This document shows, in pieces, positions 6,689 to 25,633 of a DNA stretch of 64,000 nucleotides (position 1 is its first letter; every line of letters starts with the position of its first letter). Where the stretch lies: contig DF237095.1 of assembly GCA_000708835.1 (NCBI GenBank), positions 109,447-173,446 of the forward strand, written 5' to 3'. The stretch comes from Klebsormidium nitens. Its lineage: Eukaryota; Plantae; Klebsormidiophyceae. A model generated the notes under the pieces. The model had not been told where the DNA came from. It searched no databases and saw only the letters and a program-made list of their open reading frames with translations. Made by a program: the position numbers and the translations under genes.

Positions 6689-9600
6689 ATGGCAGGAACG
6701 TGTTTGTTATGTTCTTTGGCGGCAGGAAAACAGGCATTGGCGCGCTTTTCCAACTTGGATAGGAGCGCGGGCCTGGCTTCCAGAGAGGGGTCAGCAGCCA
6801 AACTTGTGGCTGGAACAAATGAGATGCGAACAAATGCGGTTCTAGGGAGAGGAAAAGCTGCAGCATTGAGGACGAGCAAACCCCTGTTGAGCACGAGGTC
6901 TCCCCTGGCTGCAGATTGCAAGCTACCTGGTAATGGTGTTGCATTGCGAAACATCTTTTTGCATACAGCATCATCAGAAAGGCGCCGGCAGTGTCAGGGG
7001 GCGCCCTTGCATAGAAAAGCAGCGGGGTGGTACAGACAAGGCGCCGACACCCTCGCTAGAAAAGTTGAGTGCGTTGAGGAGGGGTGGGGGGCCCAGACAA
7101 AAGGACCGCGTTCTGTGAAAGTTACTTTGGGGAGGGCGTCGGAATGCTTGCCTAAACGGCCGTGTCTCGTACGTGTACAATTTCCTGCCCCGCTTTGCCA
7201 TGCTCCTCGTAGGCTTTGTCCTCTACGGGCAAGCACTTCGGACGCTGAGCCAGCTGTCGGGATGGCGTCAGACCTACCGTCCGAAAGGTCGGACAGCGCC
7301 GGCAGCCAAGCTGCCAGCTCTCCGTCCAAGCTGGAAACTGACGCGGGGCCGTTAGAAAAAATCTTTGGGTCAGAGGAGGTGGGGACATCTTCGAATGACG
7401 AGACTTCGTTCGATGGGGGTACAACTAGTCAGGGGGAGGAAGACACGCGGGGCTATCGGCGCGAGACGGTGCTTCCGCATCGGCAGCTGCGGGAGGAGGT
7501 TAAGGGCCGGCGGTCAACCAAACCCTGGCGGCCTAACAAGCCCGAGCGCCGGTCGGCCAGCCACGATTTGGCGCAGACTCACTATAAGAATCAGGTGAGT
7601 GGACCCTCTGCGAGGGAACGCGAACCTTGGCTTTATGAGACTGACTCAGAGGGCGAGGAGGAGGAAGAAGAAGAGCGAGATGATTACTTGGGGGCCGCGC
7701 CGCACTTAGAAAAGCTGCCAGAACCTCGTAGGGGGTTCCGTAAAGCTACGAAAAGGGGGGAAGGTTTAGAGCTCAGGGTGCTTAAAGGCGCGCGGTTAGA
7801 CAGCGGTCTCCGCCGCCCGAGTAGGCCGAAAAGGAGATCGACAGAGGGGGCGCCGGCTGCGGTTGCGTCAGATCAGGTGAGACACGGTGGTGCAGCTTGA
7901 TTAAAAGTGGATCATCTTGTTCCAGAGTCAATTTTGGTCCAGTGAGACTGCCCGGAGGGAATCAACGAGCACAAGTGGAGAAAGGTAACCAAGTCTTAAA
8001 GCCGTCGCACTGGCTTTTTGTGAGGCCAGCATAAGTCTTACCGGAGTGGGCCAGCGTCGAGGCATTGGCTTTGTCATTAAGGATTCAGGCCCTGTTTCTG
8101 CGTAAAGTCAATTGGAATACATGCAATTAGACAGCCGTGAAACAAGTATGGTAACCAGTTTGAGCGGAAGGCTAGGACACTCCAGACCCTCTTCTGGCCA
8201 GCCATCTGTTTGGCATATGACGCAAACAGTTGGTCATCTCAAGTTGTACATCTATGACGTGATTGCGAAACGAACTCGAGGTGGCAGCATTGGAGCTTTC
8301 AAGCTACACCACCTACCCATCAAGGCACCCAAGTCTCACATCTCGTTTGGATTGCCCCAGGACTTTCCTCTAGATGATGCCCTCGGCCGAATGCTCGTGT
8401 ATTGGTTTGACCAGGCTTTGCTTAAGCAGTTCCAATTACAGATTATTAAGCCAAAAGTCTCTTCCGGAGGAGAAAATGTAGACAGCATTACAAGTGATCC
8501 CCTTAACCGACTTCACTGGCCACACCCTTGCGAGCCTCCTTACCCAAGCACCTTAGGTCAGTGCGCACATACAACTTGGAGAGGCGCGGAAGGAAACTAA
8601 AACGACAAGAGATTCGAATTTGCCACCACCTCTCCTTTGAACCAACTCCTATCAACCCATTCGTACTTCCACGCAGGGTGGCGCCACGAAAGACCTTCAC
8701 AACGACGAGTTTGGCGTAACGCTGTACCTGCGGCCAGGCTCGCTCGGGTGCGTGACGTGGGTCATGCGCGCGCTCGAGGCGCAGCCAAAAGAGGGGAAGC
8801 TGGACGACCTTTTGGACACGATGCTCGAGGAAGCGCCCGTGACGGTCTCCGACATGGGGAACGTGATGAAGCGGTTGATGGAGCAGCGGAGGTGGCGGCG
8901 CTTGTTGCAGGTAGGGAGGAGTTGTTCCAATCGAAGTGACGTGTCTTGAAGGCAGTAAATATTCCTGTCTTTTTATGCTTACGGTTATGAGAGCTTTGGA
9001 TATGAGTAAATGATGTTGGAGCGGCGGAGGTGGCGGCTGTTGGTGCGGTTAGGTCTTTTCCTGGGTTGGAGTGGCGTCTTGTGAAGGCGAGAAGTGTGCC
9101 TTCGTCAACCTGCTTCTCTTTTGACCCATCTTTTGATACCTAGCTTTGGTCTGGTTAGACTATTAATGAACACAAGCGCTGGCGGCGAGAAGTTCAACGT
9201 CCAAGCGGCGATTCTCGATTCAATGCGTTTGCCTCGTCAGTGCTGCGCTCAAGATTGCCAGTTGGTGGCTTATGTTCGTCCAAGCGCTGTTGCAGCAACT
9301 GCCCTGGCGGCGGCAGCTGCGGATTGAAGAAAAGGGTACTTTTTGAGTCATCCTTTGTGAACAACGGCAGTTTGTTGTTCTTTTTTGTGACCAGTCTGAC
9401 GGTACGTATCTGCAAACGGGCGAGAGACACTCGGCCTTTGGAAGTCGTTCTCTGAGCCCTTCCCGGTACCTACTTTAAGCAGGTTTGCGCGGAGACGTTG
9501 ACGTGGTTATGGGTATGCTGCACCTTGGCGAAGCCTCTCAATGGACGAAAAACGTAATCCTTAACGACGTACTTTCTCCCTTTCTCGTCTCGTCGGCTGC

Positions 9601-12600
9601 ATCATTACAGAAATCCGTGAAGCTCTCTGAATCAGCCCCAGCTTATCACAACAATCTTTCTTTACCTTTGACCTCGTCTCTGAAGCCGTCTGGAAAAGGA
9701 GCGTCCCTATCAAGCAGAGAGTTGCCCCACGAGACCGAAACCGTCCACAACAGAAGGGTGGAGTCACGAATTGCTCAAACGATGCCCCGTTTTGAATCGC
9801 AGGTCCTCGAATACCTCGAAGCCCGCAACTTCGCGCTCGCGTCCTACTACCACATCGCGATCGACGCGCTCGGCCGGTGCCGTCGCTACAAGGAAGCGGG
9901 CGAGCTGTTCCGCTCGGAACGGTGCCCCAAAAACACGTTCACGTACAATGTCGTCATGCAAATCTACACGCGCCAAGGGAAGATCGAGAAAGCGGAGGAG
10001 GTCTTCAAGGAGATGCGGACAGCAGGGGTGGTGGTCGAGGCGCGGACGTACAACGTTCTTATCGACTATTACTATAAGCGGAGGGGGGGCTTCGATAAGG
10101 CGCTGGTGAGTCGTTCAACCGCATGCTGTACCAGCAGATGCTAGCAGAGGGTATTAACACGGATCTCATCACCCACAGCATGCTTGTCAGCAACTCCGGG
10201 CGGCCAGTTCCGTTTATCTCCTTCCTCTTTCTGTCAAAGGTCCGCCTCTCTTTTTGGGTTCTGTACGACAGATGCTGGCGGAAGGCATTGACCCGTGTAC
10301 GGCTTGCTCATCAGCAGCTGCGGGCAGCTCGATCCGTCCATCTTCAAACCGTTCTTGTTGATTCCGCTTCTCTCAGAATTCCGCTCGGTTTTCGTTTGGA
10401 GCTGTGCCGGCAGATGCCGGCAAAAGGTATTGACCCAGATCGCGTGACGTATAGCACGCTGCCGGTAGTTCCTCTATTCTCCTCAAGTTTCATTATAATA
10501 TGTGCAGGTTGTCTCGAGAATTCCGTTTTGCTTTTCTCAGGAGCTGTACGGGCAAATGCTGGCAGAAGGTATCCACCTGACTCGCGTCACTAATGACAGG
10601 ATCATCAGCGGCTGCGACATCTTCATCTAAAGCCCAATTCCTATTCATGATTACGTTTGATTTGAAAGTATACTTTCTCTCAAATCCGCTTTTCTTTTTC
10701 AGGAGCTGTACCAGCTAATGCTAGAAGAAGGCATCGACCCGGACCTTGTGCCGTACAGCATGCCCCATCTGCAGTTGCGGCAACTTCATGCGACACCGGT
10801 GCTACATTGTGTATACGTTAATATATCGTTCAAACAAGTATGCTCTTTCACAAACCCCCCATTCCTTTCTCAGGAGCTGTATGGCCAGATGCTGGCAGAA
10901 GGCATCGACCCGGACCGCATGACGCACAGCATGCTCACCAGCGGCTGCGGCAGCTAAGCTTCAAGGTAGTCATCATTCATGAACATTGTCTGGAAATAGG
11001 ACTTATTTTTCCGCTCTATATTGTCAGGAGCTTTACCGCCAGATGCTGGCGGAGGGCATCGACCCGGACCGAGTGACGTACAGCGTGCTCATCAGCTTGA
11101 GGGCCCATCAGTTTCAACCATCCCAAATACGCGCCGTCAAGAATCTCGGTTGTTCCACTCTTTCTTTCTGCCGCGCAGGCGCTGTACCAGCAAATGCTGG
11201 AAAAAAGCATTGACCCGGACCGACTGACATACAGCATGCTCATCAGCGGCTGCGGCAGCTTCGTCTGAAACTAGTCGTTCTTCGTGATCATGTTCAGTTA
11301 TGGGAAATAGACTCTGTCTCAAATTCCGCTCTCCCTTCGCAGGAGCTGTACCGGCAGATGCTGGCGGAAGGCATCGACCCAGACCGAGTGACGTACAGCA
11401 TGCTCATCAGCGGCTGCGGGCGGCTCGAGCGCAACCTTCCGGAGCAAGCGCTCGCGTTCTTTAAGGACATGAAGGAGCGCCAGGTGGAGCCGGACTTGCC
11501 GGTTTACAACGCGCTCATTGATACGCTTGGGAAGGCGGGGATGTGCGACGAGGCGGCGGCAGTGCTTGAGGTAAGAAAGTCTGGGTTTTACGGGTTCGTC
11601 ATGGTCGGGCCCCAAGAATTCAAGCGCAGGCGTTTGCGTGTTTCAAGGTATGACAGAGCGCCAAAGTTGGATTGGACCTATCCGTCTACAACGTGCTCAT
11701 CGATACGCTCGGCAATGCGGGGACGTGCGACGAGGTGGCAGCGGTACTCGAGGTAAGCGATGCCTAGGGTTGAGATTTTGAATCAGTCGTCGGGTGTAAA
11801 GGTTTGAGAGCGAGCGCTTGATTTACAGAGACACAGTGATACGCCAAGTGAAACTCGACTTGCCCGTCTATGATGGATCGAAGGCCCAGTAACCTGACCT
11901 ACATGGCGCTCATCAACTTCTACAGCCGGTGCAATCATGTTTCCCCAACTTCACTTACACATTAGCTAACATACTGTTGATCTGGAATCTTTCAGGGCAT
12001 GGAAAACACGGACTGGCGGCCAAACATCGTAACATACACATCGCTGATCGACTCGTATAGCCGGCGAGGTCGCTGGGAAGATGCGGAGGCCATTCTGGAG
12101 CGTATGAAGGAGGAAGGGAAGCGGCCGAACGTGGTCACGTATACGTGCATGCTGAACGCGTATGGCGTGGCGAAGCTGATGGATAAGGCGGAAGGGGTCA
12201 TCGACGAAATGAAAGCAGCGGTAAGCGGTTTTGGAGTTCTTTTCGTCGGGCTTGTGAGTTGGATTGTTAGCTTTCGTAAGATTTTGTAGGAGGACCCGCA
12301 TAGTCGGACGAGAATGGCGTTGCGAAGCTGATGGATAAGGCGCAGGAAGTTGTTGACGAGATGATGGCAGCGATGAGGGGTGCTGGACCTTCGCTTATCA
12401 TCGGAATTTGGTTTTGAGTTTGTTTACATCCATCGAGATTGTTTTATAAGAGCTGCCTGATTGAACGCATATGGCGTAGCAAAAGCTGCTGTCGAATTAA
12501 ACGGAGGGAGTTATCGGCGAGATGAAGGCAGCGGTAAGCGGTTTTGGGGTGTTCTTCCTTACTGGAGCTTTAGAGTCAGAGATGTTCGGATCTCCTAAGA

Positions 12601-15600: not shown

Positions 15601-18455
15601 GACCACTTAACCGAAGTGGGGCGTGCAGCATAACAAGCCGTAGAAGACATGAAAATGTATCTAAAGCATTTCTGACCTGTTTTCTGGCATCTTTGCAGAA
15701 CCAAGTCGACGAGGCGAAGGCCATCTTCGCTGCGATCCCCGCCCCCGACAAGATTGCCTACGACCAGTTCATCAACCTGCTAGCCAAAGTGGGGCGTGCG
15801 GCAGACGCATACCTAGCGCTCGAAGACATGAAAACGAAGGGAATCGAGGTGTCGCACTACGCGTACTCGGGGGTCATTTTGGCCTACTGCAACGGGGGGG
15901 GGGACGACGGGGTGCTGCGCAAGGAGCGGATCCTGGAGTTTTTGCAGGTAGGGGCGCGCTAGGTGTGTGTTTGTGACTGGAGGGTTGAGTTTTATGAGTT
16001 CGATGGAGACTTTGTACGGGTCTCTTAAGCTTCCGGTTTGTCGGCTGGACCAAAGCAGTGCGGAGTCGACGGATCTCGGAAGCGGCAGGGGTTGGCCGAT
16101 GATTTGTGGTTTGGATCTTAACGTGGCAATACCATTGATTCACGATGCTTCCTGGCGACGCCTCGGTCTCAATTGGTTTTGATGCATCTGTTACAAGAAC
16201 TTATAAGGTTTACTCTTGTTCCTCCTGCTAAGTAGATATCATCATCAATGGAGAATCAGCGCTCTTGAGTGAACCTGACCAGCAACGCTGACGCGTATAT
16301 TCCGAGGGTACTGGAGCTTTTTGATTCCAAAGTCGGAATATGACTTGAACGTCGGCGAGGCGGTTTGTCAACTTGAAAAGATTGCCCTTTGTAAGAGTTA
16401 CCCATTGCAAAGCAAATGGAGCGTGCCATACACTGCAACTTGACCTACGTACCTCTCTTTGAGCAACCTCCTTCGCGTTAGGGACTCCCTGAATAAGATT
16501 CTGCCCACCTTTACGTTGTAGGAGATTCGCGATCTAGGAATCGGTTGAGCGCCGCTGTGTGCAACGTCGCGAGCAACGCCTTTGCAGTGCGCACTGTGTT
16601 TGGCAGAAAAGCGCCCCTGAATGAAATGCCTCCCATCGGTTTTGCAGGAGATGCGCAATTTGGGAGTCAGGCCAAGCGCCGCCAGGTACCATATTGTGGG
16701 AAAGCATCTGCTTCACTCAACCTGGTTCCCTGATAACAGTCTGCCCGCTTTCATTTTGTAGGAGATGCGCGACCTAGAAATCGAGCCGAGCGCTGCCGTT
16801 TACAACGTCGCAATCAATGCGTTTGCGGTGCGCAACATGTACAGCGAGGCCGAGGAGATGTACCGGCACATGCAGGACAACAAGGTGGAGCCGGACGCGG
16901 TCACCTTCGAAACGCTGATGAGCATGTACACGGAGATGCACGACGTCAAGCAGGTACGGCATCAGCTTGAAGACGCAACAAAGGGCGCCGTTTTGAGAAC
17001 TGCGGTGGCTTTCTATTGTCAGCTGCAGGGTGCTCCAGCGTGAAAGCTTCTGGTTTGATGGCCGCGAGAAAAGGCAAGAGCGCTCATTAGGCCTCCTGAG
17101 TTCTATTTTAGGGAGCAACGCTAGAGAGCACGTACACGGATATACACGAAGTTGACCAGGTAAGAGACGAGTGCCCGTCGCAGTCTGGGCCAACCCAAGC
17201 ATCCTGGACGCGCGGAATTGAGTTCAATCTGCATCATGGACGGTGCGGGTCCTAGCGGGCGACCTAGCTTATTTGATAGCGCGTTCAAACAGCGTCGATT
17301 GCAGTGGCACTGTGACATAATTTTCTTGGAATAGTGGAATAGAGGCTCGCCGCTTCCTGACAGTCGTGTATTCGATCTGCGAAAAGACGAGGTTCAAGAA
17401 AAGCTGCTGCGCAATACATGTTTTTGGTGCAGGATGTCCCTGGAGCTAGCACATGGATTGATTCGTTTTGAAAAGGAAGTATCTTTCCTATATGCTATGC
17501 CATTTGCATTGGCGATTCAGCGACTTGCCGGGGTCTCATACCAAGTATTTGAAAATCGACGAAGTTGACGGGAGCAGAAGTTCGTTTCAATGTCCTTGCG
17601 AAGTCTGGCCCTGTTGTCTTTCCTGGTTCTTGGGTCCCAACCCAAGTCTGCCCGTCTCCTCTGGCGCTCGGCTCTAATATTTACCTCCGCTGTCGACCAT
17701 TTTCCTCTTGAGCAGCAGGAGGTTCTGCTTCCGTGCCCTAGAATCGTGTCAAAATTCTAAGGAAGCTTTTGTAAGTTGTAAATTGCTGATTCAGGCTCGA
17801 TCTTTCCCCGCAGGCGCTGGGCGTTTTCCGCTACATGACCGCCGTCGGCTACCTCCCGTCCACGTACGCCTTCTTCCTCCTTGTGCGCGCGTGCGAGCTC
17901 GCCGGCTCGCGCACCGCACCCCGGCCGCACATCTTCGACATTCTAGAGGACCACGGCATCACGGTTGACGTCACGTTTGTCGACATGCTCGCCGAGTCGC
18001 TCTGGTGGCACCGCGGCCGCCGGCAAACGGTCCTCGACGTGCTCGAAACCGCGCGCAACGTCGGGCTTTACCCCGCGGAGCATAAGGAATCTCCGGACGA
18101 ATGGACGCTCGTACTGGATACGTCGTCCGAGGGCACGTGCCAAGGGATGGTGCTGGTATGGTTAGCGGAGGTCCGGTTAGCATTCGAGCAGAAGGAGAAG
18201 GGACCAAAGCGGTACGCGGTTACGGTCAGCGCAGACGGGTTAGCGGGGAGCTTTGGCGGGTTGCCCATCGGGCTAGGCGCGGTTAAGGAGACGTTGGACG
18301 ATATGGGGAGTCCGTTTGTGCTGCGGGAAAAGGGTGGGAGTGGGGGCGGAGGGCCCAGGCTGGAGGCCGAGGCGCCCGCCGTGCATAGTTGGCTGATTCA
18401 ACCGGAGGTTAAGGTTAAATTGATAAACCCGGAGGCCGACCTGGTTAAGTCATGA
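6689..18455 (+). CDS. Organelle-targeted P-class PPR protein with C-terminal SMR-like domain, 10 exons, ~1210 aa
   Basis: Exons 6689-7876, 8677-8910, 9803-10105, 11343-11570, 11996-12220, 13269-13435, 14558-14762, 15699-15947, 16762-16953, 17814-18455 (3633 nt, all phases consistent). Many 35-aa PPR motifs (e.g. PNIVTYTSLIDSYSRRGRWEDAEAILERMKEEG). The C-terminus has the PPR-SMR pattern 'WTLVLD..S.G....MVLVWL ... LDDMGSPF ... PRLEAEAPAVHSWL'. The N-terminus is transit-peptide-like and acidic. Confidence 0.92.
9008..12550 (+). repeat. Donor-side copies (exon end plus 5' splice site) downstream of PPR exons 2, 4 and 5
   Basis: ~9008-9090 copies the end of exon 2. ~11655-11758 copies the end of exon 4 with an intact GTAAGC at 11753. 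~12305-12380 and ~12460-12550 copy the end of exon 5; GTAAGC is intact at 12534 and lost at 12373. Confidence 0.88.
10120..11342 (+). repeat. Eight degenerate tandem copies of the PPR exon-4 acceptor plus exon start
   Basis: Copies of (cag)GAGCTGTACCGGCAGATGCTGGCGGAAGGCATCGACCC... start at ~10122, 10258, 10399, 10541, 10703, 10874, 11028 and 11179; the real exon starts at 11343. Period ~135-170 nt. AG is retained in the five proximal copies. Confidence 0.93.
12715..13268 (+). repeat. Three degenerate copies of the PPR exon-6 acceptor plus exon start
   Basis: ttttcag|GG(C/T)TTG... at 12724, 12902 and 13081; real exon at 13269; period ~180 nt. Confidence 0.9.
13560..14557 (+). repeat. Six degenerate copies of the PPR exon-7 acceptor plus exon start
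   Basis: cag|GTACGA(G/A)GACGTGCTCA... at ~13570, ~13730, 13900, 14071, 14224 and 14387; real exon at 14558; period ~155-170 nt. Confidence 0.93.
15360..15698 (+). repeat. Two degenerate copies of the PPR exon-8 acceptor plus exon start
   Basis: gcag|AACCAAGT... at 15375 and 15538; real exon at 15699; period ~162 nt. Confidence 0.9.
16500..16761 (+). repeat. Two degenerate copies of the PPR exon-9 acceptor plus exon start
   Basis: tg(t/c)ag|GAGAT... at 16522 and 16648; real exon at 16762. Confidence 0.85.
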
Positions 18456-19035
18456 GGAGTCCTCACATGCACCGCAGTGTTGACATCCGGGTTGTGCCCG
18501 CGGTTGAGGGCAGCCAGTTATGAAGCACCCGTGCCCATTGGAAGCATTCAATGTGAGTTTTTGTCTGCAAGCCAGCTCCTTGGGAAGGCAAGCAGAGGTC
18601 GTCGAGCACTTTGACGATCATGATGCAGGCGTCCATCTAGCTTGATCATTGTCCAGGTATGCGTAAGCGATGTGTCCAACCATGTGCACGCTTGCACGTG
18701 CCAGGATGTGTAATCATATGCAGCGTATAATGTAAAGCCTGCAATCAGGCCGCGGGGCCGATCATTGTGCAGTTGCCGCCAAGTCCAATCCCATGTTGCA
18801 ATCTGGGACTTGCTCGTTTTAAGGTATTGCGGTTCAACTCAGTGTACATTAATTACATTCAATGCAATAAGATGGCATGTGTTAACGGGCCATTGCCTCA
18901 GAGTAAAAAGCACAGCGAGCATGTTTATTATGAAAGTCTTGGCCTGCATGACGCACTAGTATGGACGTGCAGCTACTAGATCTATAGGCGCGCAGATCAA
19001 TCATGCAAAGCATAAGTTTACCTGTCTTTGCGGGC

Positions 19036-20409
19036 TTAAACTTTAACAGGTTCATCCCGACCATCATGCTCCATTGCCCTCAGTTGCAAATCCATATCGT
19101 CAAACTGCTTAGACGGCTTCCGAACCCTTGACCTACAAAACTTCACGAACAGCGCCGAGAGCGGAGTGACTAGGTTGTCCTTGATCCACCTTCGATTGAT
19201 CAACTGGAAGCGTTCGCTCGACTCGGACTCAACCGATACAAAGATCATCCCAAACACAAGTGGAATCAAAAACCACGCGCCCCCAAGGGTGGACAACAGA
19301 CTAAGCCAAGGGTTCTGCTCTTGCTGAATGGCGACTCCGAGGTTTGGGCCCGATAACCTCAACCGCAAGATATAGAAGTCTAGGTCGGTAACCAAGTAGT
19401 AAACGTCAAGCCCTGCTCCAGCACACTGCGCGCTTTCGGCATTGCACAGATTGATCCTCTGCTGGTCACCGGTCAGAACGCTGATCTCAGCGGGCTTGAA
19501 GAACGCACTTTCTTCAGAGGAAGAAAACGGTTGCCGGTACGTTACCTCGATCGGCACTAGTCCCGTCTGATTTGCTAATGCTTTATATGTCCCCACGCCC
19601 CGCTCCACCAGATTCTCTTCTATGGCCGCCTTGTTTTCTGCCAAGAGGACTTGAACTGAGTCGCACGACGGGCCGCAAAACCCGGCAGAACTCTGCCTAT
19701 TCCTGCAATAAGTAGATGGCGTGCGGGCGCGTCGGTTAGGGGATCTTGTGGGATCTGTACCAAAGAACTCCGCAGGATAATTTGAGTCGGCAAGTCCTAG
19801 GAAAAGGTCGATTGTTGCGCCTTGGTTCAGCTGGGAGGGTTGCACCGACTCGAAACCCTCCAGGTCATAACCTAAGCAGAACAAGCCGGAACCAGTCTGC
19901 TCAAACCCTTTGACAGCCGGCATTGGCTCCGCTTTGCAGTTTGAGACTGTGTCCCCAGACTCTGGCGACCGGAAGAGGAAACTAACACCAGGGTTGCTTT
20001 TGCCAAGGTTTATTAGCGTGGCACTCTGGTTGAAGACCGGCGAGCTGTACCACTGAGAAGGGAGCTGTTCATCCACTTCACCACTGGCACCAAACTGCGG
20101 TAGCGAACTGTTTGGTGGTTGTGCTAACCAGTTCCTAACCAGGCATCGTGAGACCAGCCTCCCTATCTTATATTGACCCTGTCCGCAGTCGCTGAGAAAG
20201 TCCTGTTCATTGAGGCACACCGCAATGTAAGGCAGCTTTATGGTCCTCTTGATGTCTGTGGATGTTGCAACTAGAGGGGTTTTGCTCAGACCGTATGCTT
20301 TCTGTATCAAGAACCCGCAGTAAATCAGGTAGCCTGACAAGAGGAAGAAGTAGACTACCCAGGCGCAGGTCCGCCACCGCTTCTGCACCTCCTGAGGACT
20401 TGGCGCCAT
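19036..20409 (-). CDS. Intronless two-transmembrane protein with Cys-containing ectodomain; candidate PAC/TMEM206- or DEG/ENaC-fold ion channel
   Basis: Uninterrupted 457-aa ATG-to-stop ORF. Hydrophobic segments at aa ~16-36 and ~368-392. Ten Cys and three N-glycosylation sequons (N100, N127, N280) lie between them. Motifs: KTPLVATS...LPYIAVC after TM1 and NPWLSLLSTLGGA at TM2. The ORF is well supported; the family call is inference. Confidence 0.75.
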   Translation of the reverse strand: MAPSPQEVQKRWRTCAWVVYFFLLSGYLIYCGFLIQKAYGLSKTPLVATSTDIKRTIKLPYIAVCLNEQDFLSDCGQGQYKIGRLVSRCLVRNWLAQPPNSSLPQFGASGEVDEQLPSQWYSSPVFNQSATLINLGKSNPGVSFLFRSPESGDTVSNCKAEPMPAVKGFEQTGSGLFCLGYDLEGFESVQPSQLNQGATIDLFLGLADSNYPAEFFGTDPTRSPNRRARTPSTYCRNRQSSAGFCGPSCDSVQVLLAENKAAIEENLVERGVGTYKALANQTGLVPIEVTYRQPFSSSEESAFFKPAEISVLTGDQQRINLCNAESAQCAGAGLDVYYLVTDLDFYILRLRLSGPNLGVAIQQEQNPWLSLLSTLGGAWFLIPLVFGMIFVSVESESSERFQLINRRWIKDNLVTPLSALFVKFCRSRVRKPSKQFDDMDLQLRAMEHDGRDEPVKV

Positions 20410-20615
20410 TTTGGCGCCAGACTGTTTGTTCGCCGCTCATGCAATGGCAAGCCTGCGCCAACTCCAAGAAGACAGGCTTTCCAACAAGATCAGAAGAGTT
20501 CGCTAAATCATGAAAGCTAATATTAGTACAGATGGCCAGGTAGTACAAGACTCAAGTATTAGGAAGTGCCAGTGCATTATGCAAATGTCAGTGTCAAAAG
20601 TCTGAAGAATTCAAT

Positions 20616-20687
20616 CCCCCGTGAATTACCCCCGTGAATTACAAGACTGGCTGCAGGGGGACGGTGGACGGTGGACGGTGGACGGTG
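20616..20687. repeat. Short tandem repeats upstream of the two-TM gene
   Basis: (CCCCCGTGAATTA)x2 at 20616-20641 and (GACGGTG)x4 at 20660-20687. Confidence 0.85.
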
Positions 20688-22119
20688 GAGCGGCGCAGCG
20701 ATCGAAGGGAGTGCGCTTTGGGCCTGCGCGCGCTGGACTCGCATTGTCCATGGTGCTATTTGCAATAAGCGACGGTTATAATCTTGCACCATAGAAACCT
20801 AGGTACCAACTCAAGCCCCCACACGGACTGGAAGTACCTACCGGTACTGCCTACTACCTACGATGCCTACTACCTACCTGCTACGACTTCAACGAGAATC
20901 TGCTTTGGTTACAGTATCTACAGTAGGTAGGTGTACCAAATCAGACAGCGACATGAGAATGCATGAGAATGGCTATTTATAACTAATTACCTATTCGAGC
21001 TGGAACCACCTGCAGTTATGGTCTGTGCCTGCGTTCTTATTTATTGGTGCTTGTTCCTATTTCTAAGCTGCAAATATGACGTTGGTTGCTGGACCTAGCA
21101 TCAGTACGGTAATATATACCGGTATACCGGTACAAGTCAGTGACGATACAATCTTACAACTTTTGTAGCTCGCAGAAGACTTGGTTCCTCTACGTATTAG
21201 ACATATCAAAACTTGCTGACGGAGCTTGTGATTGATTTATATGCACATCATCACGCAACATCATGTGTCACGAGAGCTCCTGGTGTGCTAACTGCGAGCT
21301 CAATCTGCTTTCAAGCAGCTCCTGAAGGGCTGCCGCCAAGCTGGTCCATCCAAGAGCTCTCGTATAGCAGGACAGCAAACCAATGAGTGGGCTATAGCGG
21401 CAGGTAAGCCTTCCGTTCCTTGTTCCACATCTCTATCCTTTGAAACAAAAGGGGGCAATGGCAGCTCTGCAGTCATATTTGGCCACCAGCGAATCCTACA
21501 TGACGCTGCTTTCTATTGCTGTCAGACCTACGAGCTAGGGTATACTATGGAACTGTGGAACTGACGACCATCCGACCAGATTACGAAATGAAGACCTCTG
21601 AGCGTTGCCAAAACCGGCCGTGTCAAGTCATTGAGCTGCTCTTCGTCAAGTAGGCGGGCTGCAAACTGGATAAGGAGTGTATGAGAGCCAATGCATTTGT
21701 CAGCATTGCCAACCTTTGGCATTACCCTTTCTTTTGATAAGCGTGATATTCTCCGGCCCAAGACTTCCTGGTGCCGTATTTATTTGGCTGCACCACAAAA
21801 AAAGCTGACGGTTGAAAATGTTCCAGAATCTTTAGTAAAATTTGAAGCCACCTGGAAAATTGCGTTGGTACTTTCAAACTAGTTTCCGCTCTCTGGTGAA
21901 AGTCTGCTTGTATCAAGTGGTTGTGAACTATTAAGAAACTTGGACGATCGCGCAAGTGGCACAGTATAGGAAAACGTCTAAGTAAGAGTATCAGCACCTT
22001 TTGCACTAAGCTCGATTAAAGACCCAGCCATACGATCATCAGCCCTTGTATACATCAAGATACAAACATATTAAATTACGCTTCAGTTCTTTCAACTCAA
22101 CCTTCCTCTGTAGTAGTAG

Positions 22120-25100
22120 GCATAAGCTCCAGCGCAGCCCCGACACACTGGCGAGGGGCAGTCTTTCCGGTCGAGAGACTCCAGATCTCATAAGGTCTCC
22201 CCGCGCCCGACAAAATGGGCGCTGTCTCTGGCCGTGTCTGGGAGCCCGGAGGGGGGCGTTGCAGGGGCTTGCAAGCTTTCTCTTCTTGTGTAGCACCGCA
22301 CTCATCTGCTTGACAACATGTGAGCCCAACGACTGCGCATCTACTGCTTGTTCCCAGTTCCAGGGACACATCTCTGATCAAGCGATGCAAACGATGCCAT
22401 GCCTTTCAAGCTGTCAAAAATGTGGTGCGCGCTCGCTTTCCAAGAGATGTACTTGTCGTCAGAACCTGTCAGAATAGCTCCCGCTTCCACACTCTTCTTC
22501 CGATGCCAGCATGTTGCCGTTGCAGGGCTGATGGATTACACCGCAAACCTGCCCCAATTGGGTCCCGGGAGTTTTGAAAACTGATTGACAAAGAAGTCTG
22601 TCTCATCCGCAGATCTAAGTGTGCCCGATAGCCCAGCCTTAGAGAGCTCCACCACAAACCCCAAAGCCGCAGCCACTCGGGTTCTCTCGGCCGGCGCTTT
22701 CGGACGGAACGACTGGACTGTCAAAGAGGCATTGGTTTCACCTGATTCTGATACATTAGAGAATGAAAGTCTACAATTGATAAGAACGAAAGGGGTTGCT
22801 GGCGAAACGGGAACAAGTCTTGACGAGCGACATGATCGGACAGGGGGGGAGGAAAATGTGGCGCTGGGCCAACTCGACGTGCGAGTTGGTGCACTTGAGA
22901 GGGAAAAGAAACTAGGGACGGGGAATGTTTTGGACGACTTGCCGCCCGAAGCTTGGGAGCCCTGCCACTGGTGCAGAAACGAGAGCGTTGGGGGAGGTTT
23001 CAGCTTTTCATCACAGGAAGCCACGTGTCCTGGCCGAGAAGCGGATGCCAACGGGCAGCCTTACCGTGAGTCTACTTTCGGGACGGTGACTTCTTAAGCT
23101 TGGAGTATCGCACGATTCTGCGAATACCCTTTCTTTGATCTCACGAGATCCAGCAGAACTTTCGGATTCGCCACTTAGGGAAAGTTTAGCAGGCAGTAAG
23201 CATGGTCCCACAGCGAAAGTGCTTTCTAATGCTTGAAGGAAGGCTAGGTAATCGTTGTAGCCCTGCTGTCGGCGACAATTCATCGTTCTCCGTAAACGAG
23301 CGACCCGAATGTCCAAAGGTTCCGGTTGCGGGGACGTCAGATCGAAAGTTCGCCAAACAATCTCAACGCCGAACTTCTGCACGTGACTCACTCTCAGCCA
23401 ATCTGAACGGCTGAATACCAAGAAGAATTGATGCGTTCATCCAGGGGGAAATGCATATCTATGCAGATGATTCGCCCCGCACAAGACACCACTTCCTAGG
23501 GGAAAGATAACATTAAGAAAAAGGACACTCACTGATTACTAGCTTGCGAGAGCCATTTGAGCGGAACGATAGCATATTAAACGACATTTTCACGACACTG
23601 TGGTGCGTAGTATTCGCGGCGTCGGTAAATCAACCGATTCCCCGTTCCGCTCCGCAGGCATCCGGGGCTTCATCATCCCCGAAACGACCGGCGGGCTGAA
23701 CCAGATCCGCCGCTACATCTGCAACGCGGTGGGGCTCGCGCACCTTTTGCACGCCGCCCTAGTTCTCCCGCGCCTGCAGGCGGACGTGTTCTGGAAGGAC
23801 GGCGGCGCGTTTGAGGACGTCTTCGACGTCGATCATTTCATCGGACGGCTGAGAGGCGTCGTCCCCGTGGTGCGCGAGCTGCCGAAGATTCTGCAAGGGC
23901 TGCCGCCGACCGAGATCAAAGTCAGCCGCTTCGACAAGTGAGTGCTACTCATTGGTTCTAGGGGTCAGATCTGGATGTCGAATCCAATTCATTGAGCGGT
24001 GCTCAGTCCGCTTCTGCATGTTCAAGATAATCTTTCAGACCCAATGTAACACTTTGTGTCAAATTTCAATCGAGCATCTCGCGTGAGCTCTGGGTACAAA
24101 ACTCCTCACAGCGTCCGAAGAAAGCTTTGCATCAGAAGGGAAACGCTTCGCAGAATAACGGGTTCGCGAAATCGCCTCCGCTTTGATTCGAAGCACCCTG
24201 AACATCGCCACGAACCCGCTTCAAAAGCTCATCTTCATTGCTGACAGCCGTTAGAATGCCGCGCAGCCAAGTTCTCACCTTCTTTTTGTAACATCGAGCC
24301 CCCAGCCGCAGGCCGTCTGACTACGTCCGGTGGGTTCTACCAGTTCTCCAACGGCGGGCAGTCATCAAGCTGCGAGCCCGGTTTGGGGGCGAGTACGAGC
24401 CCGGGTTTGACCACTTCGAGCAGGCTCGGTGTCGGGCGTGCTTTGGCGCGTTCAAGTTTGTGGACCATGTTGCCGAAACGGGGGAGTTGCTGCTGGCGAG
24501 AATGAGAGAGAAAGGGCGGTTTGCGGCGCTGCACCTCAGATTCGAGCCCGATATGGTGAGGAGAACTTTTGAAGTCAGTCTTCCAGATTCTCCCTCGACT
24601 GTAAGGCAGGAAAAGATTCTGCTTCGGAGCTTTCCGTCCAAGGTGTCAGCCAGAAGGTGACTGAGACACCTCGAGTAAGCGGAGGGCCTTGTTTTCCTGC
24701 AGTCGATACGTGGCTTTCCCACATTGTGTACGCATCTGGAAAGACTTTAACCGACTTTTGTTGACAGGAAAGGAAAAGGGAGTATGAGTCGGACAGGAAG
24801 ATTGCTCGATCGAAAAGGGTGGCATCGAACGGAAAATCACGAGCAAACAGTCTTGCTATGCAAGAGAAGAGTTTTCAACGGCAGAACGTTGACGAGCGGC
24901 AAAGTAGAGGAATTTCGACTCTTTTCCGGCAGGCTATTTCTACTGGACCTTTAACCGGTTGCCGCTTGTGGCCCAAACACACAGATCCTGCGTCCATCCC
25001 TGCCAGGTGGCCTTCTCCCGGTGTGACTACCCAGACCTGCTCCCCGCTTCCGCTGACGTCTTACAGAGCATCCGGTCAACGAGCCGGAAGTTCAACAAGC

Positions 25101-25633
25101 GGAAACAGGTGGAGGCGGCGGAACTCCGGCGGCAGGGCCTGTGCCCGCTGACCCCCGCAGAAACCGCTAAGGTTTTCCTCGCGCTTGGGATCCCTACCGA
25201 ATTGCCGGTGTACCTGGCGACGGGGGACTTTCTGGAGCCGGAAGGGCTGACGTCGGTGTACCGTAACACGTTCCGAAAAAGCGATCTGCTGACGAAAGCA
25301 GAGCTGGAGCCGTACGGGGGTAGGGCAAACCTCTTGGTCGCGTTGGATTTCTACGTGGCAACTAGGAGTGACTACTTTCTGGCGACGTTCTATTCAAACG
25401 TGGAGCAAATGGTGGTGTCCGATCGGACGCTCAGCGGCCGGAGGCACAGCTTGATTTTGAATCGGACGGCTGTGGCGGAAGCGCCGGCACATGAGGGGGA
25501 GTGGCCAACATTCAAGGCTATGATGCTGAGGTCTCATCTAGGAGAACAGGTTACGGTGCAGGCGGGGCAAGTGCCCGAGAAGTTGCCGTACTGTATGTGC
25601 CCAAAACGGACGTCAAGCGAAGGTGCCCGTTGA
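22120..25633 (+). CDS. O-fucosyltransferase family (GT106-like) type II membrane protein; start codon unresolved
   Basis: Exons ~22120-22319, 22613-23065, 23658-23937, 24312-24555, 25007-25633 with consistent phases. Hallmark motifs 'GGLNQIRRYICNAVGLAHLL.A.LVLP', 'FEDVFDVDHFI', 'ALHLRFEPDMVAFSRC', 'GLCPLTPAET', 'ALDFYVATRSDYF'. N-terminal TM anchor after RR. Confidence 0.9.

What the first reader, a model, noticed from the sequence alone, without database searches (positions are those of the whole stretch)
19036..20409. Intronless two-TM protein resembling the proton-activated chloride channel (PAC/TMEM206) in a plant-lineage genome
The topology (short N-terminus, TM1, ~330-aa Cys/glycan ectodomain, TM2, basic tail) is that of trimeric PAC, ASIC/ENaC and P2X channels. 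From memory of human PACC1, two blocks align. After TM1, KTPLVATS...KLPYIAV matches KHPVMSVS...DAPGIAL. Before TM2, FYILRLRLSGPNLGVAIQQEQNPWLSLLSTLGGAW matches FFVVFEWKDPFIQKVQDIVTANPWNTIALLCGAF, including the NPW motif. PAC and DEG/ENaC are mainly known from animals and I know of no land-plant member. Being intronless in an intron-rich neighbourhood also suggests retroposition or horizontal acquisition. This could be an unrecognised acid-gated or sensory channel in algae.
Basis: partly seen in the sequence, partly recalled or inferred. Interest (0 to 1): 0.75.

Follow-up and report, generated by a model that had tools for sequence, protein, structure and literature searches.

The report
Algal two-helix DEG/ENaC-like membrane protein
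This is a real, expressed, intronless gene of the alga Klebsormidium nitens for a membrane protein that belongs to a tiny family known only from early-branching streptophyte algae; the family shows a weak but consistent sequence link to animal ENaC/ASIC-type channels rather than to the chloride channel PAC, so it may be the plant lineage's first relative of these three-subunit channels, but its fold is not yet shown.

Summary
The 457-aa ORF (window 19036-20409, minus strand) is real. It is transcribed unspliced in RNA runs from four studies and is under purifying selection (dN/dS 0.11). It has two TM helices around a 331-aa ectodomain with 10 Cys. The NCBI model KFL_001460170 wrongly removes 306 nt as an intron.

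An exhaustive profile search of 1.84 billion proteins found only seven relatives. With the word searches, the family has about 13 sequences, all from Klebsormidium or Chlorokybus where the source is named.

No member matches Pfam TMEM206, and block profiles do not retrieve PAC chains, so the remembered PAC alignment has no statistical support. The sequence link is to DEG/ENaC instead. Chlorokybus paralogue P0013 passes Pfam ASC (29-33 bits, E 4e-8), and eight other members give weaker hits in the same register, covering TM1 and the post-TM1 strands only. The query itself gives none.

The AlphaFold models are poor (pLDDT 47). Foldseek's top 17 hits are all PAC (E >= 6e-3), but an unbiased aligner cannot separate PAC from generic helical hairpins. 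A predicted P0013 homotrimer passes its controls (0.38 vs 0.00).

Best reading: subunit of a divergent DEG/ENaC/PAC-fold trimeric channel, function untested. The scan flagged similar two-TM candidates on other DNA of this genome before.

The parts
19036..20409 (-). Coding sequence, 457 codons plus stop, with no intron
   Evidence: ORF list. Colinear RNA contigs without joints. dN/dS 0.114 against orthologue P0001.
18874..20734 (-). Largest extent of the transcript seen in assembled RNA contigs: 5' UTR about 100-325 nt, 3' UTR about 110-160 nt
   Evidence: Table 8: pieces 18926-20734, 18874-20509, 18899-20551, and 18887-20039 plus 20011-20536.
20371..20409 (-). Short cytosolic N-terminus (residues 1-13) with the family motif MA-x-P-x-x-V. 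There is no His-Gly motif.
   Evidence: Alignments A2 and A4. Net charge +2.
20302..20370 (-). TM1 (residues about 14-36)
   Evidence: Hydropathy. AlphaFold helix 10-43 with pLDDT about 80.
20182..20301 (-). Post-TM1 conserved block (residues 37-76): K-x-P-h-V...D...LPYIAVC. Together with TM1, this is the part that matches Pfam ASC positions about 16-100 in relatives.
   Evidence: ASC hits in register. (hhalign 97.3% between the Klebsormidium and Chlorokybus groups over this part).
19309..20301 (-). Ectodomain (residues 37-367), 331 aa, with 10 Cys and sequons at N100, N127 and N280. Predicted to be beta-rich, at low confidence.
19872..20177 (-). The 306 nt that the NCBI model KFL_001460170 removes as an in-frame GT..AG intron. 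It is in fact coding.
   Evidence: P0002 lacks residues 78-179. Boundaries. RNA contigs run through it. Orthologues keep it, and dN/dS for codons 96-180, within it, is 0.10.
19222..19338 (-). Pre-TM2 strand plus TM2 (residues 358-396): GV..QQEQNPWLSLLSTLGGAWFLIPLVFGMIFVSVE. This is the most conserved and most constrained block of the family.
   Evidence: Alignments A4 and A6. dN/dS 0.044. The equivalent residues 328-337 of P0013 lie in the predicted trimer interface.
19039..19221 (-). Cytosolic C-terminal tail (residues 397-457), basic (RSRVRKPSK) and weakly constrained
   Evidence: Net charge +4. dN/dS 0.56.

Best explanation
The gene encodes one of four Klebsormidium nitens paralogues of a small protein family found so far only in early-diverging streptophyte algae (Klebsormidium and Chlorokybus). 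The protein crosses the membrane twice, with short cytosolic ends and a 331-residue, Cys-rich, probably glycosylated outer domain. The family is most likely a very divergent branch of the DEG/ENaC/ASIC superfamily, which shares its core fold with PAC/TMEM206. I infer that three subunits assemble around a central axis lined by TM2, whose G-G-A-W motif is the best conserved part, and form an ion channel gated by a stimulus sensed by the outer domain, such as protons, a ligand, or osmotic or mechanical load. Shown here: the gene, its expression, its constraint, its topology, family membership, and the N-terminal ASC likeness in relatives. Inferred only: the fold of the outer domain, trimer formation by this paralogue, channel activity, and ion selectivity.
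Confidence: 0.5

Rival explanations
1. [quoted passage not shown] On this reading it is closer to PAC than to DEG/ENaC.
Against: No member hits Pfam PF15122 at E <= 10. No PAC chain is retrieved by the protein, the family profile or the two block profiles. All fold evidence comes from a pLDDT-47 model with TM-scores of 0.16-0.30, and the unbiased search does not separate PAC from helical hairpins. The only significant family-level sequence signal is to ASC. The ectodomain is about 100 residues longer than that of PAC. TM2 (residues 368-396) holds no Lys or Arg, whereas, from my own knowledge, a TM2 lysine sets anion selectivity in human PAC. The two TM2 sequences could not be aligned here.
Confidence: 0.12
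2. It is a lineage-restricted two-pass membrane protein that is not a channel, for example a receptor, a cell-wall or adhesion sensor, or an ER-Golgi cargo receptor of the Erv41/ERGIC kind. On this reading the ASC likeness near TM1 is fortuitous or convergent.
For: The sequence likeness to ASC is limited to TM1 plus about 55 residues. The ectodomain has no detectable relatives. The fold could not be predicted with confidence.
Against: ASC is the top or only Pfam family in nine divergent members, always TM1 to TM1 and in one register, and it passes Pfam's threshold in P0013. No ERGIC_N or COPIIcoated_ERV hit was listed at E <= 10 in any scan. The strongest constraint and conservation lie in TM2 (dN/dS 0.044, G-G-A-W motif), as expected of a pore or assembly helix and not of a mere anchor. 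The predicted homotrimer places that motif at the interface. Trimeric two-TM channels dominate the Foldseek list.
Confidence: 0.33
3. The gene arrived recently by retroposition or horizontal transfer, which would explain why it has no intron.
Against: Orthologues in two other Klebsormidium-like genomes are also uninterrupted and lie in conserved flanks (85-86% identity). Paralogues P0004 and P0006 are nearly colinear with genomic DNA. The family also occurs in Chlorokybus. GC content (0.54) equals that of the surroundings. No relative outside streptophyte algae was found among 1.84 billion proteins.
Confidence: 0.04

Closest known systems
DEG/ENaC/ASIC superfamily (Pfam PF00858 ASC)
   Same: Two TM helices with short cytosolic ends and a large Cys-rich outer domain. 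TM1 plus the post-TM1 strands match the N-terminal 85 positions of the ASC profile in relatives, with P0013 above the gathering threshold. A homotrimer is predicted for P0013, with TM2 at the interface.
   Different: The query itself gives no ASC hit. About 80% of the profile (finger, thumb, palm, TM2) is unmatched. There is no N-terminal His-Gly motif and no recognisable G/S-x-S filter in register. The N-terminus is far shorter (13 aa). The family occurs in streptophyte algae, whereas published non-animal Deg/ENaC are from heterokonts and Tunicaraptor (PMC10507113).
PAC / ASOR / TMEM206 proton-activated chloride channel (Pfam PF15122)
   Same: The topology and overall size class match. PAC gives the best, though weak, Foldseek and VIA matches, end to end from TM1 to TM2. 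PAC shares its beta-core fold with DEG/ENaC (PMC7904269).
   Different: There is no sequence or profile match. The ectodomain is about 100 residues longer and the N-terminus is much shorter. TM2 holds no basic residue. PAC is described as conserved in vertebrates (PMC7904269).
P2X receptors
   Different: The fold of the ectodomain is different. There is no sequence signal, and the scores are weaker than for PAC or ASIC.
Erv41/Erv46 (ERGIC2/3) cargo receptors
   Same: Two TM helices flank a large luminal beta-rich, Cys-containing domain, with short cytosolic ends.
   Different: No ERGIC_N or COPIIcoated_ERV Pfam hit at E <= 10 in any member, and none among the top 50 fold matches.

Membership tests
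PAC/TMEM206 (PF15122) | Match to the Pfam TMEM206 profile | tested here: not met
   No PF15122 hit at E <= 10 for the query, for 12 relatives, or for their N- and C-terminal pieces.
   phmmer and hmmsearch with the protein, the family profile A2 and the block profiles A5 and A6 against all PDB sequences returned no PAC chain.
PAC/TMEM206 (PF15122) | Fold: 12-stranded beta-domain between two TM helices | tested here: inconclusive
PAC/TMEM206 (PF15122) | Acid-activated, outwardly rectifying anion current; basic pore residue in TM2 | not testable with these tools
   Electrophysiology is needed. The sequence shows no Lys or Arg in residues 368-396, but TM2 could not be aligned to PAC.
DEG/ENaC/ASIC (PF00858 ASC) | Match of this protein to the Pfam ASC profile at or above the gathering score (23.6 bits) | tested here: not met
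   The query gives no hit, either whole or as its N-terminal piece.
DEG/ENaC/ASIC (PF00858 ASC) | Match of demonstrable relatives to the ASC profile | tested here: met
   P0013 scores 29.1 bits whole and 33.1 bits as its N-terminal piece (E 4.2e-8). P0009 scores 23.5 bits. Seven further members give E 6.6e-4 to 0.08, all in one register. The query group links to P0013 and P0009 by hhalign at 97.3%.
DEG/ENaC/ASIC (PF00858 ASC) | Coverage of the whole family profile (ectodomain core and TM2 with the G/S-x-S filter) | tested here: not met
   Only profile positions about 16-100 of 455 are matched. Ectodomain and TM2 pieces give no ASC hit. No solved DEG/ENaC chain is found in register.
DEG/ENaC/ASIC (PF00858 ASC) | Two TM helices, cytosolic ends, large Cys-rich extracellular loop | tested here: met
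   TM segments at 14-36 and 368-396, a 331-aa loop with 10 Cys and 3 sequons, and positively charged ends.
DEG/ENaC/ASIC (PF00858 ASC) | Conserved His-Gly gating motif in the cytosolic N-terminus (feature known from the literature on the family; my own knowledge) | tested here: not met
   The N-terminus is 13 residues (MAPSPQEVQKRWR) and has no His-Gly.
DEG/ENaC/ASIC (PF00858 ASC) | Homotrimeric or heterotrimeric assembly | tested here: inconclusive
   Tested on paralogue P0013 only, because three copies of the query exceed the size limit. Median ipSAE 0.38 against a best control of 0.00, pLDDT at least 48. This is a prediction, not a measurement.
Erv41/Erv46 (ERGIC_N, COPIIcoated_ERV) | Match to the Pfam ERGIC_N or COPIIcoated_ERV profiles | tested here: not met
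   Neither family was listed at E <= 10 in any scan.
Unnamed streptophyte-algal two-TM family (this report) | Significant sequence relation, the same topology, and shared N-terminal (K-x-P..LP-x-[IV]-x-[VLM]-C) and TM2 (P-[WLF]-L..GG-x-W..FG) motifs | tested here: met
   hmmsearch E 3.8e-20 to 5.3e-4 against a library of 1.84 billion proteins. Alignments A2, A4 and A8. hhalign 97.3%.

The most novel reading that the evidence does not exclude
Early-diverging streptophyte algae keep a true, very divergent branch of the DEG/ENaC/PAC trimeric channel superfamily, which would be the first in the plant lineage. This gene would be one of its four Klebsormidium subunits, forming a stimulus-gated channel (acid, osmotic or mechanical) that was lost before land plants arose. 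The family would also provide the missing sequence bridge between DEG/ENaC and PAC.
Probability: 0.4. Interest if true: 0.8.

Novelty: new variant of a known kind. Interest (0 to 1): 0.6.

Why it matters
DEG/ENaC channels were long called animal-specific. Published non-animal members are limited to a few heterokonts and a filasterean relative (PMC10507113), and land plants are said to have none (PMC12806904). PAC is described as conserved in vertebrates and as unrelated in sequence to ENaC/ASIC although it shares their fold (PMC7904269). A streptophyte-algal family that links to the ASC profile at TM1 and looks PAC-like in weak fold searches would push the origin of this channel architecture far back in eukaryote history, or else reveal an ancient transfer. 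It would also give plant biologists a candidate sensor for acid, salt, desiccation or touch in an alga used as a model for the move to land. On the practical side, the NCBI gene model is wrong and can be corrected.

Tried and rejected
1. Pfam, NCBIfam and PDB sequence searches with the query gave nothing.
2. AlphaFold2 on 4 and then 12 sequences gave pLDDT 33.6 and 46.8. This is too poor for a fold claim, and both fold jobs are now spent.
3. The family profile (A2), the block profiles (A5, A6), the Chlorokybus profile (A7) and P0013:1-120 were searched against PDB sequences. No PAC, ASIC or ENaC chain matched in register. One ENaC-delta row (E 0.8) lies mid-ectodomain and is noise.
4. C-terminal and ectodomain pieces against Pfam gave no ASC or TMEM206 hit.
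5. The metagenome contig scan for more members failed once on the alignment and then found 78 pattern matches with no confirmed relative.
6. The Foldseek-independent search (pdb_via_wide) gave generic helical hairpins at the top, so it is not discriminating. The atlas shape search gave only weak rows (TM <= 0.29 by the model).
7. A literature check of the DEG/ENaC post-TM1 motif string found nothing usable. The likeness of LPYIAVC and LLSTLGGAW to DEG/ENaC motifs that I recall is therefore left as untested memory.
8. I did not type human PACC1 or any ASIC sequence from memory for a pairwise or hhalign test. No referenced copy was available, so that step was left out.
9. Pseudogene or non-gene is rejected by expression and dN/dS.
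10. Recent retroposition or horizontal transfer is rejected.
11. The bacterial promoter/terminator scan is irrelevant for a eukaryote.

Full report
**1. The observation**

The window holds one uninterrupted ORF at 19036-20409 on the minus strand. It runs from ATG to stop and encodes 457 aa. Kyte-Doolittle hydropathy gives two hydrophobic segments, at residues about 14-36 and 368-396. The loop between them is 331 residues long, with 10 Cys (an even number) and three N-x-S/T sequons at N100, N127 and N280. The N-terminus (13 aa, net +2) and the C-terminal tail (61 aa, net +4, with RSRVRKPSK) are basic. That the loop faces outward is an inference from the positive-inside rule, the Cys count and the sequons.

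**2. Organism and gene model**

The word-index search finds a 100% identical protein, KFL_001460170 of Klebsormidium nitens. It is only 355 aa long because the deposited model removes residues 78-179. That 'intron' is window 19872-20177: 306 nt, in frame, GT..AG on the minus strand. Three results show it is coding:
- Orthologues P0001 (88% identity) and P0003 (59%) keep it in frame.
- dN/dS for codons 96-180, which lie within it, is 0.10.
- Assembled RNA contigs run straight through it.

**3. Expression**

Twenty public runs from seven studies hold the stretch. I laid four runs from four studies on window 17800-21800. Each has a contig of 1.6-1.8 kb (two overlapping contigs in one run) lying colinear on 18874/18926 to 20509/20734, with no differences, gaps or joints. 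The intergenic stretches 18750-18870 and 20750-21800 are uncovered. The contigs of the neighbouring gene end at 17810 with loose ends, as at a splice junction. The runs therefore behave as RNA, and the gene is transcribed as an unspliced mRNA.

**4. Constraint**

Against P0001 (DNA from L005), dN is 0.068, dS is 0.60 and dN/dS is 0.114. Constraint is strongest in the pre-TM2/TM2 block (0.044) and relaxed in the C-terminal tail (0.56). L005 also shares flanking DNA with the window at 85-86% identity, so it is an orthologous locus. The ORF is uninterrupted there, and also on the JGI contigs that carry P0003.

**5. The family**

An exhaustive hmmsearch of the Klebsormidium profile against 1.84 billion representative proteins gave only seven hits. 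Word-index searches added P0010, P0011, P0012 and P0013. The sources are:
- K. nitens paralogues KFL_001660135, KFL_001690010 and KFL_000240410.
- A K. subtile fragment.
- Two Chlorokybus atmophyticus proteins, Chrsp14S00780 and Chrsp4S06273.
- Unnamed Logan and JGI sequences.

hhalign of the Klebsormidium group against the Chlorokybus pair gives 97.3% probability, E 2.7e-11. Two blocks are conserved throughout. One is TM1 followed by K-x-P-h-V...LP-x-[IV]-x-[VLM]-C. The other is G-[VIT]...E-Q-x-P-[WLF]-L...G-G-x-W...F-G at TM2. A scan of metagenome contigs added nothing.

**6. Is it PAC?**

No member hits Pfam TMEM206, whether whole or as N- or C-terminal pieces, at E up to 10. The PDB copy holds many PAC/ASOR/TMEM206 chains. 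The remembered alignment is therefore not above chance at the sequence level. I did not type PACC1 from memory, so the direct pairwise step was left out.

**7. The DEG/ENaC signal**

Pfam PF00858 (ASC) is the top or only family for nine of the thirteen sequences.

| Member | Best result against PF00858 |
|---|---|
| P0013 | 29.1 bits whole, 33.1 bits for residues 1-120 (E 4.2e-8); gathering score 23.6 |
| P0009 | 23.5 bits (E 3.4e-5) |
| P0006 | E 6.6e-4 |
| P0004 | E 0.018 |
| P0003 | E 0.024 |
| P0011 | E 0.034 |
| P0012 | E 0.044 |
| P0010 | E 0.044 |
| P0008 | E 0.076 |

All matches place the conserved A-W of TM1 near profile position 22 and the L-P of the post-TM1 block near position 67. 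The N-terminal end of the protein thus aligns to the N-terminal end of the profile. The query and P0001 give no hit, so the query's link is transitive. Nothing beyond profile position about 100 is matched. No solved ASIC, ENaC or FaNaC chain is found by phmmer or hmmsearch. I read this as a real but thin remote-homology signal.

**8. Fold**

AlphaFold2 gave mean pLDDT 33.6 with 4 sequences and 46.8 with 12. Only the two TM helices exceed 70.
- With the second model, Foldseek found no match at E <= 1e-3. Ranks 1-17 of 350,542 chains are nevertheless all PAC/ASOR/TMEM206 (E 6.3e-3 to 0.17, TM 0.16-0.30). P2X, the DEG/ENaC channel PDPNaC1 and ASIC follow.

Geometry therefore does not discriminate. 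The PAC-first ranking rests on Foldseek's local alphabet applied to an unreliable model. ESM-feature searches for the query and for P0009 agree with each other: the same unnamed Mucoromycota cluster at 0.95 and 0.96, the ciliate family PF27811 Y80K_N at 0.92 and 0.88, and TMEM206 at 0.85 and 0.84. These are leads only.

Deng et al. (PMC7904269) report that TMEM206 and ENaC/DEG channels share a 12-stranded beta-domain between two TM helices, with the same topology and no sequence homology. A sequence link to ASC and a weak structural preference for the smaller PAC are therefore compatible.

**9. Assembly**

Three copies of the query exceed the size limit of the complex tool. I tested P0013 residues 18-350 in three copies instead.
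- ESMFold2 gave ipSAE 0.23, 0.45 and 0.38 (median 0.38), against 0.00 for all three controls.
- That mark was reached by 21 of 30 proteins solved as pairs of one chain and by 0 of 23 solved as single chains.
- Partner pLDDT was at least 48, and at least 63% of contacts agreed between runs.
- The confident interface includes TM2 residues 328-337 (the G-G-A-W motif) and ectodomain strands.

The caveats are the tool's own: it was calibrated on two copies, passes on eukaryotes may come from memory, and the fold itself is uncertain. The result supports homo-oligomerisation of a family member but does not show it, and it does not test the query directly.

**10. Origin**

GC content at the gene (0.54) equals that of its surroundings. 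Orthologues are intronless, and paralogues P0004 and P0006 align to their genomic loci almost without interruption. The family reaches Chlorokybus, and no relative exists outside streptophyte algae. The lack of introns is a family trait. It is not evidence of recent retroposition or transfer.

**11. What is known**

Elkhatib et al. (PMC10507113) report Deg/ENaC homologues outside animals only in heterokonts and Tunicaraptor. A plant-genome survey that used PF00858 states that land plants have none (PMC12806904). My searches found no paper that links Klebsormidium or Chlorokybus to these channels. Earlier notes of this scan flagged similar two-TM candidates on other pieces of this genome. Whether these are the paralogues was not checked, since a look-up by the sequence of P0006 returned nothing. 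One follow-up found no sequence kinship to ASIC/ENaC, which the Chlorokybus link now qualifies. Another saw a PAC/ASIC-like low-confidence fold, which agrees with this report. A third read a different protein as Erv41/ERGIC-like. For this family no ERGIC_N or COPIIcoated_ERV hit appears at E <= 10.

**12. Verdict**

The PAC assignment is not supported as stated. The broader idea of a trimeric two-TM channel subunit of the DEG/ENaC/PAC fold is the best current explanation, at about 0.5. The main rival, at about 0.33, is a lineage-specific non-channel membrane protein whose TM1-proximal likeness to ASC is fortuitous. Function, gating stimulus and selectivity are untested.

Noticed in passing
window 19872-20177 (-): The deposited K. 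nitens gene model KFL_001460170 (355 aa) removes an in-frame 306-nt GT..AG 'intron'. RNA contigs, orthologues and dN/dS show that this stretch is coding, so the correct product has 457 aa.
   Followed up: yes
window 17810-18640: The neighbouring gene is expressed at higher contig depth. Its contigs have loose ends at 17810, 18280 and 18595, as at splice junctions. The ORF at 17835-18455 (+) has no Pfam match.
   Followed up: partly
window 24959-25633 (+) and 9485-10144 (+): These ORF fragments carry a GDP-fucose protein O-fucosyltransferase domain (PF10250, E 1.2e-14) and PPR repeats (E 5e-15). They are ordinary plant-lineage neighbours.
   Followed up: no
P0005 (KFL_001690010) against P0012 and P0007: The annotated C-terminus of paralogue KFL_001690010 breaks off inside TM2 (..SGSWVIRLAPPLFDVFSRSFVQ). 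The near-identical Logan and K. subtile sequences continue with a normal TM2 and tail, so this is probably a second faulty gene model in the family.
   Followed up: partly
P0008 against P0010: The Logan protein P0008 (362 aa) follows P0010 closely and then diverges and ends before TM2. It looks like a frameshifted or truncated contig rather than a distinct isoform.
   Followed up: no
ESM Atlas neighbours of the query and of P0009: Both proteins independently land on the same unnamed 'Transmembrane protein' cluster of Mucoromycota (417 aa, 212 members; scores 0.95 and 0.96) and on a ciliate cluster carrying PF27811 Y80K_N. These may be further two-TM families of the same architecture. No sequences were available to test this.
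   Followed up: no
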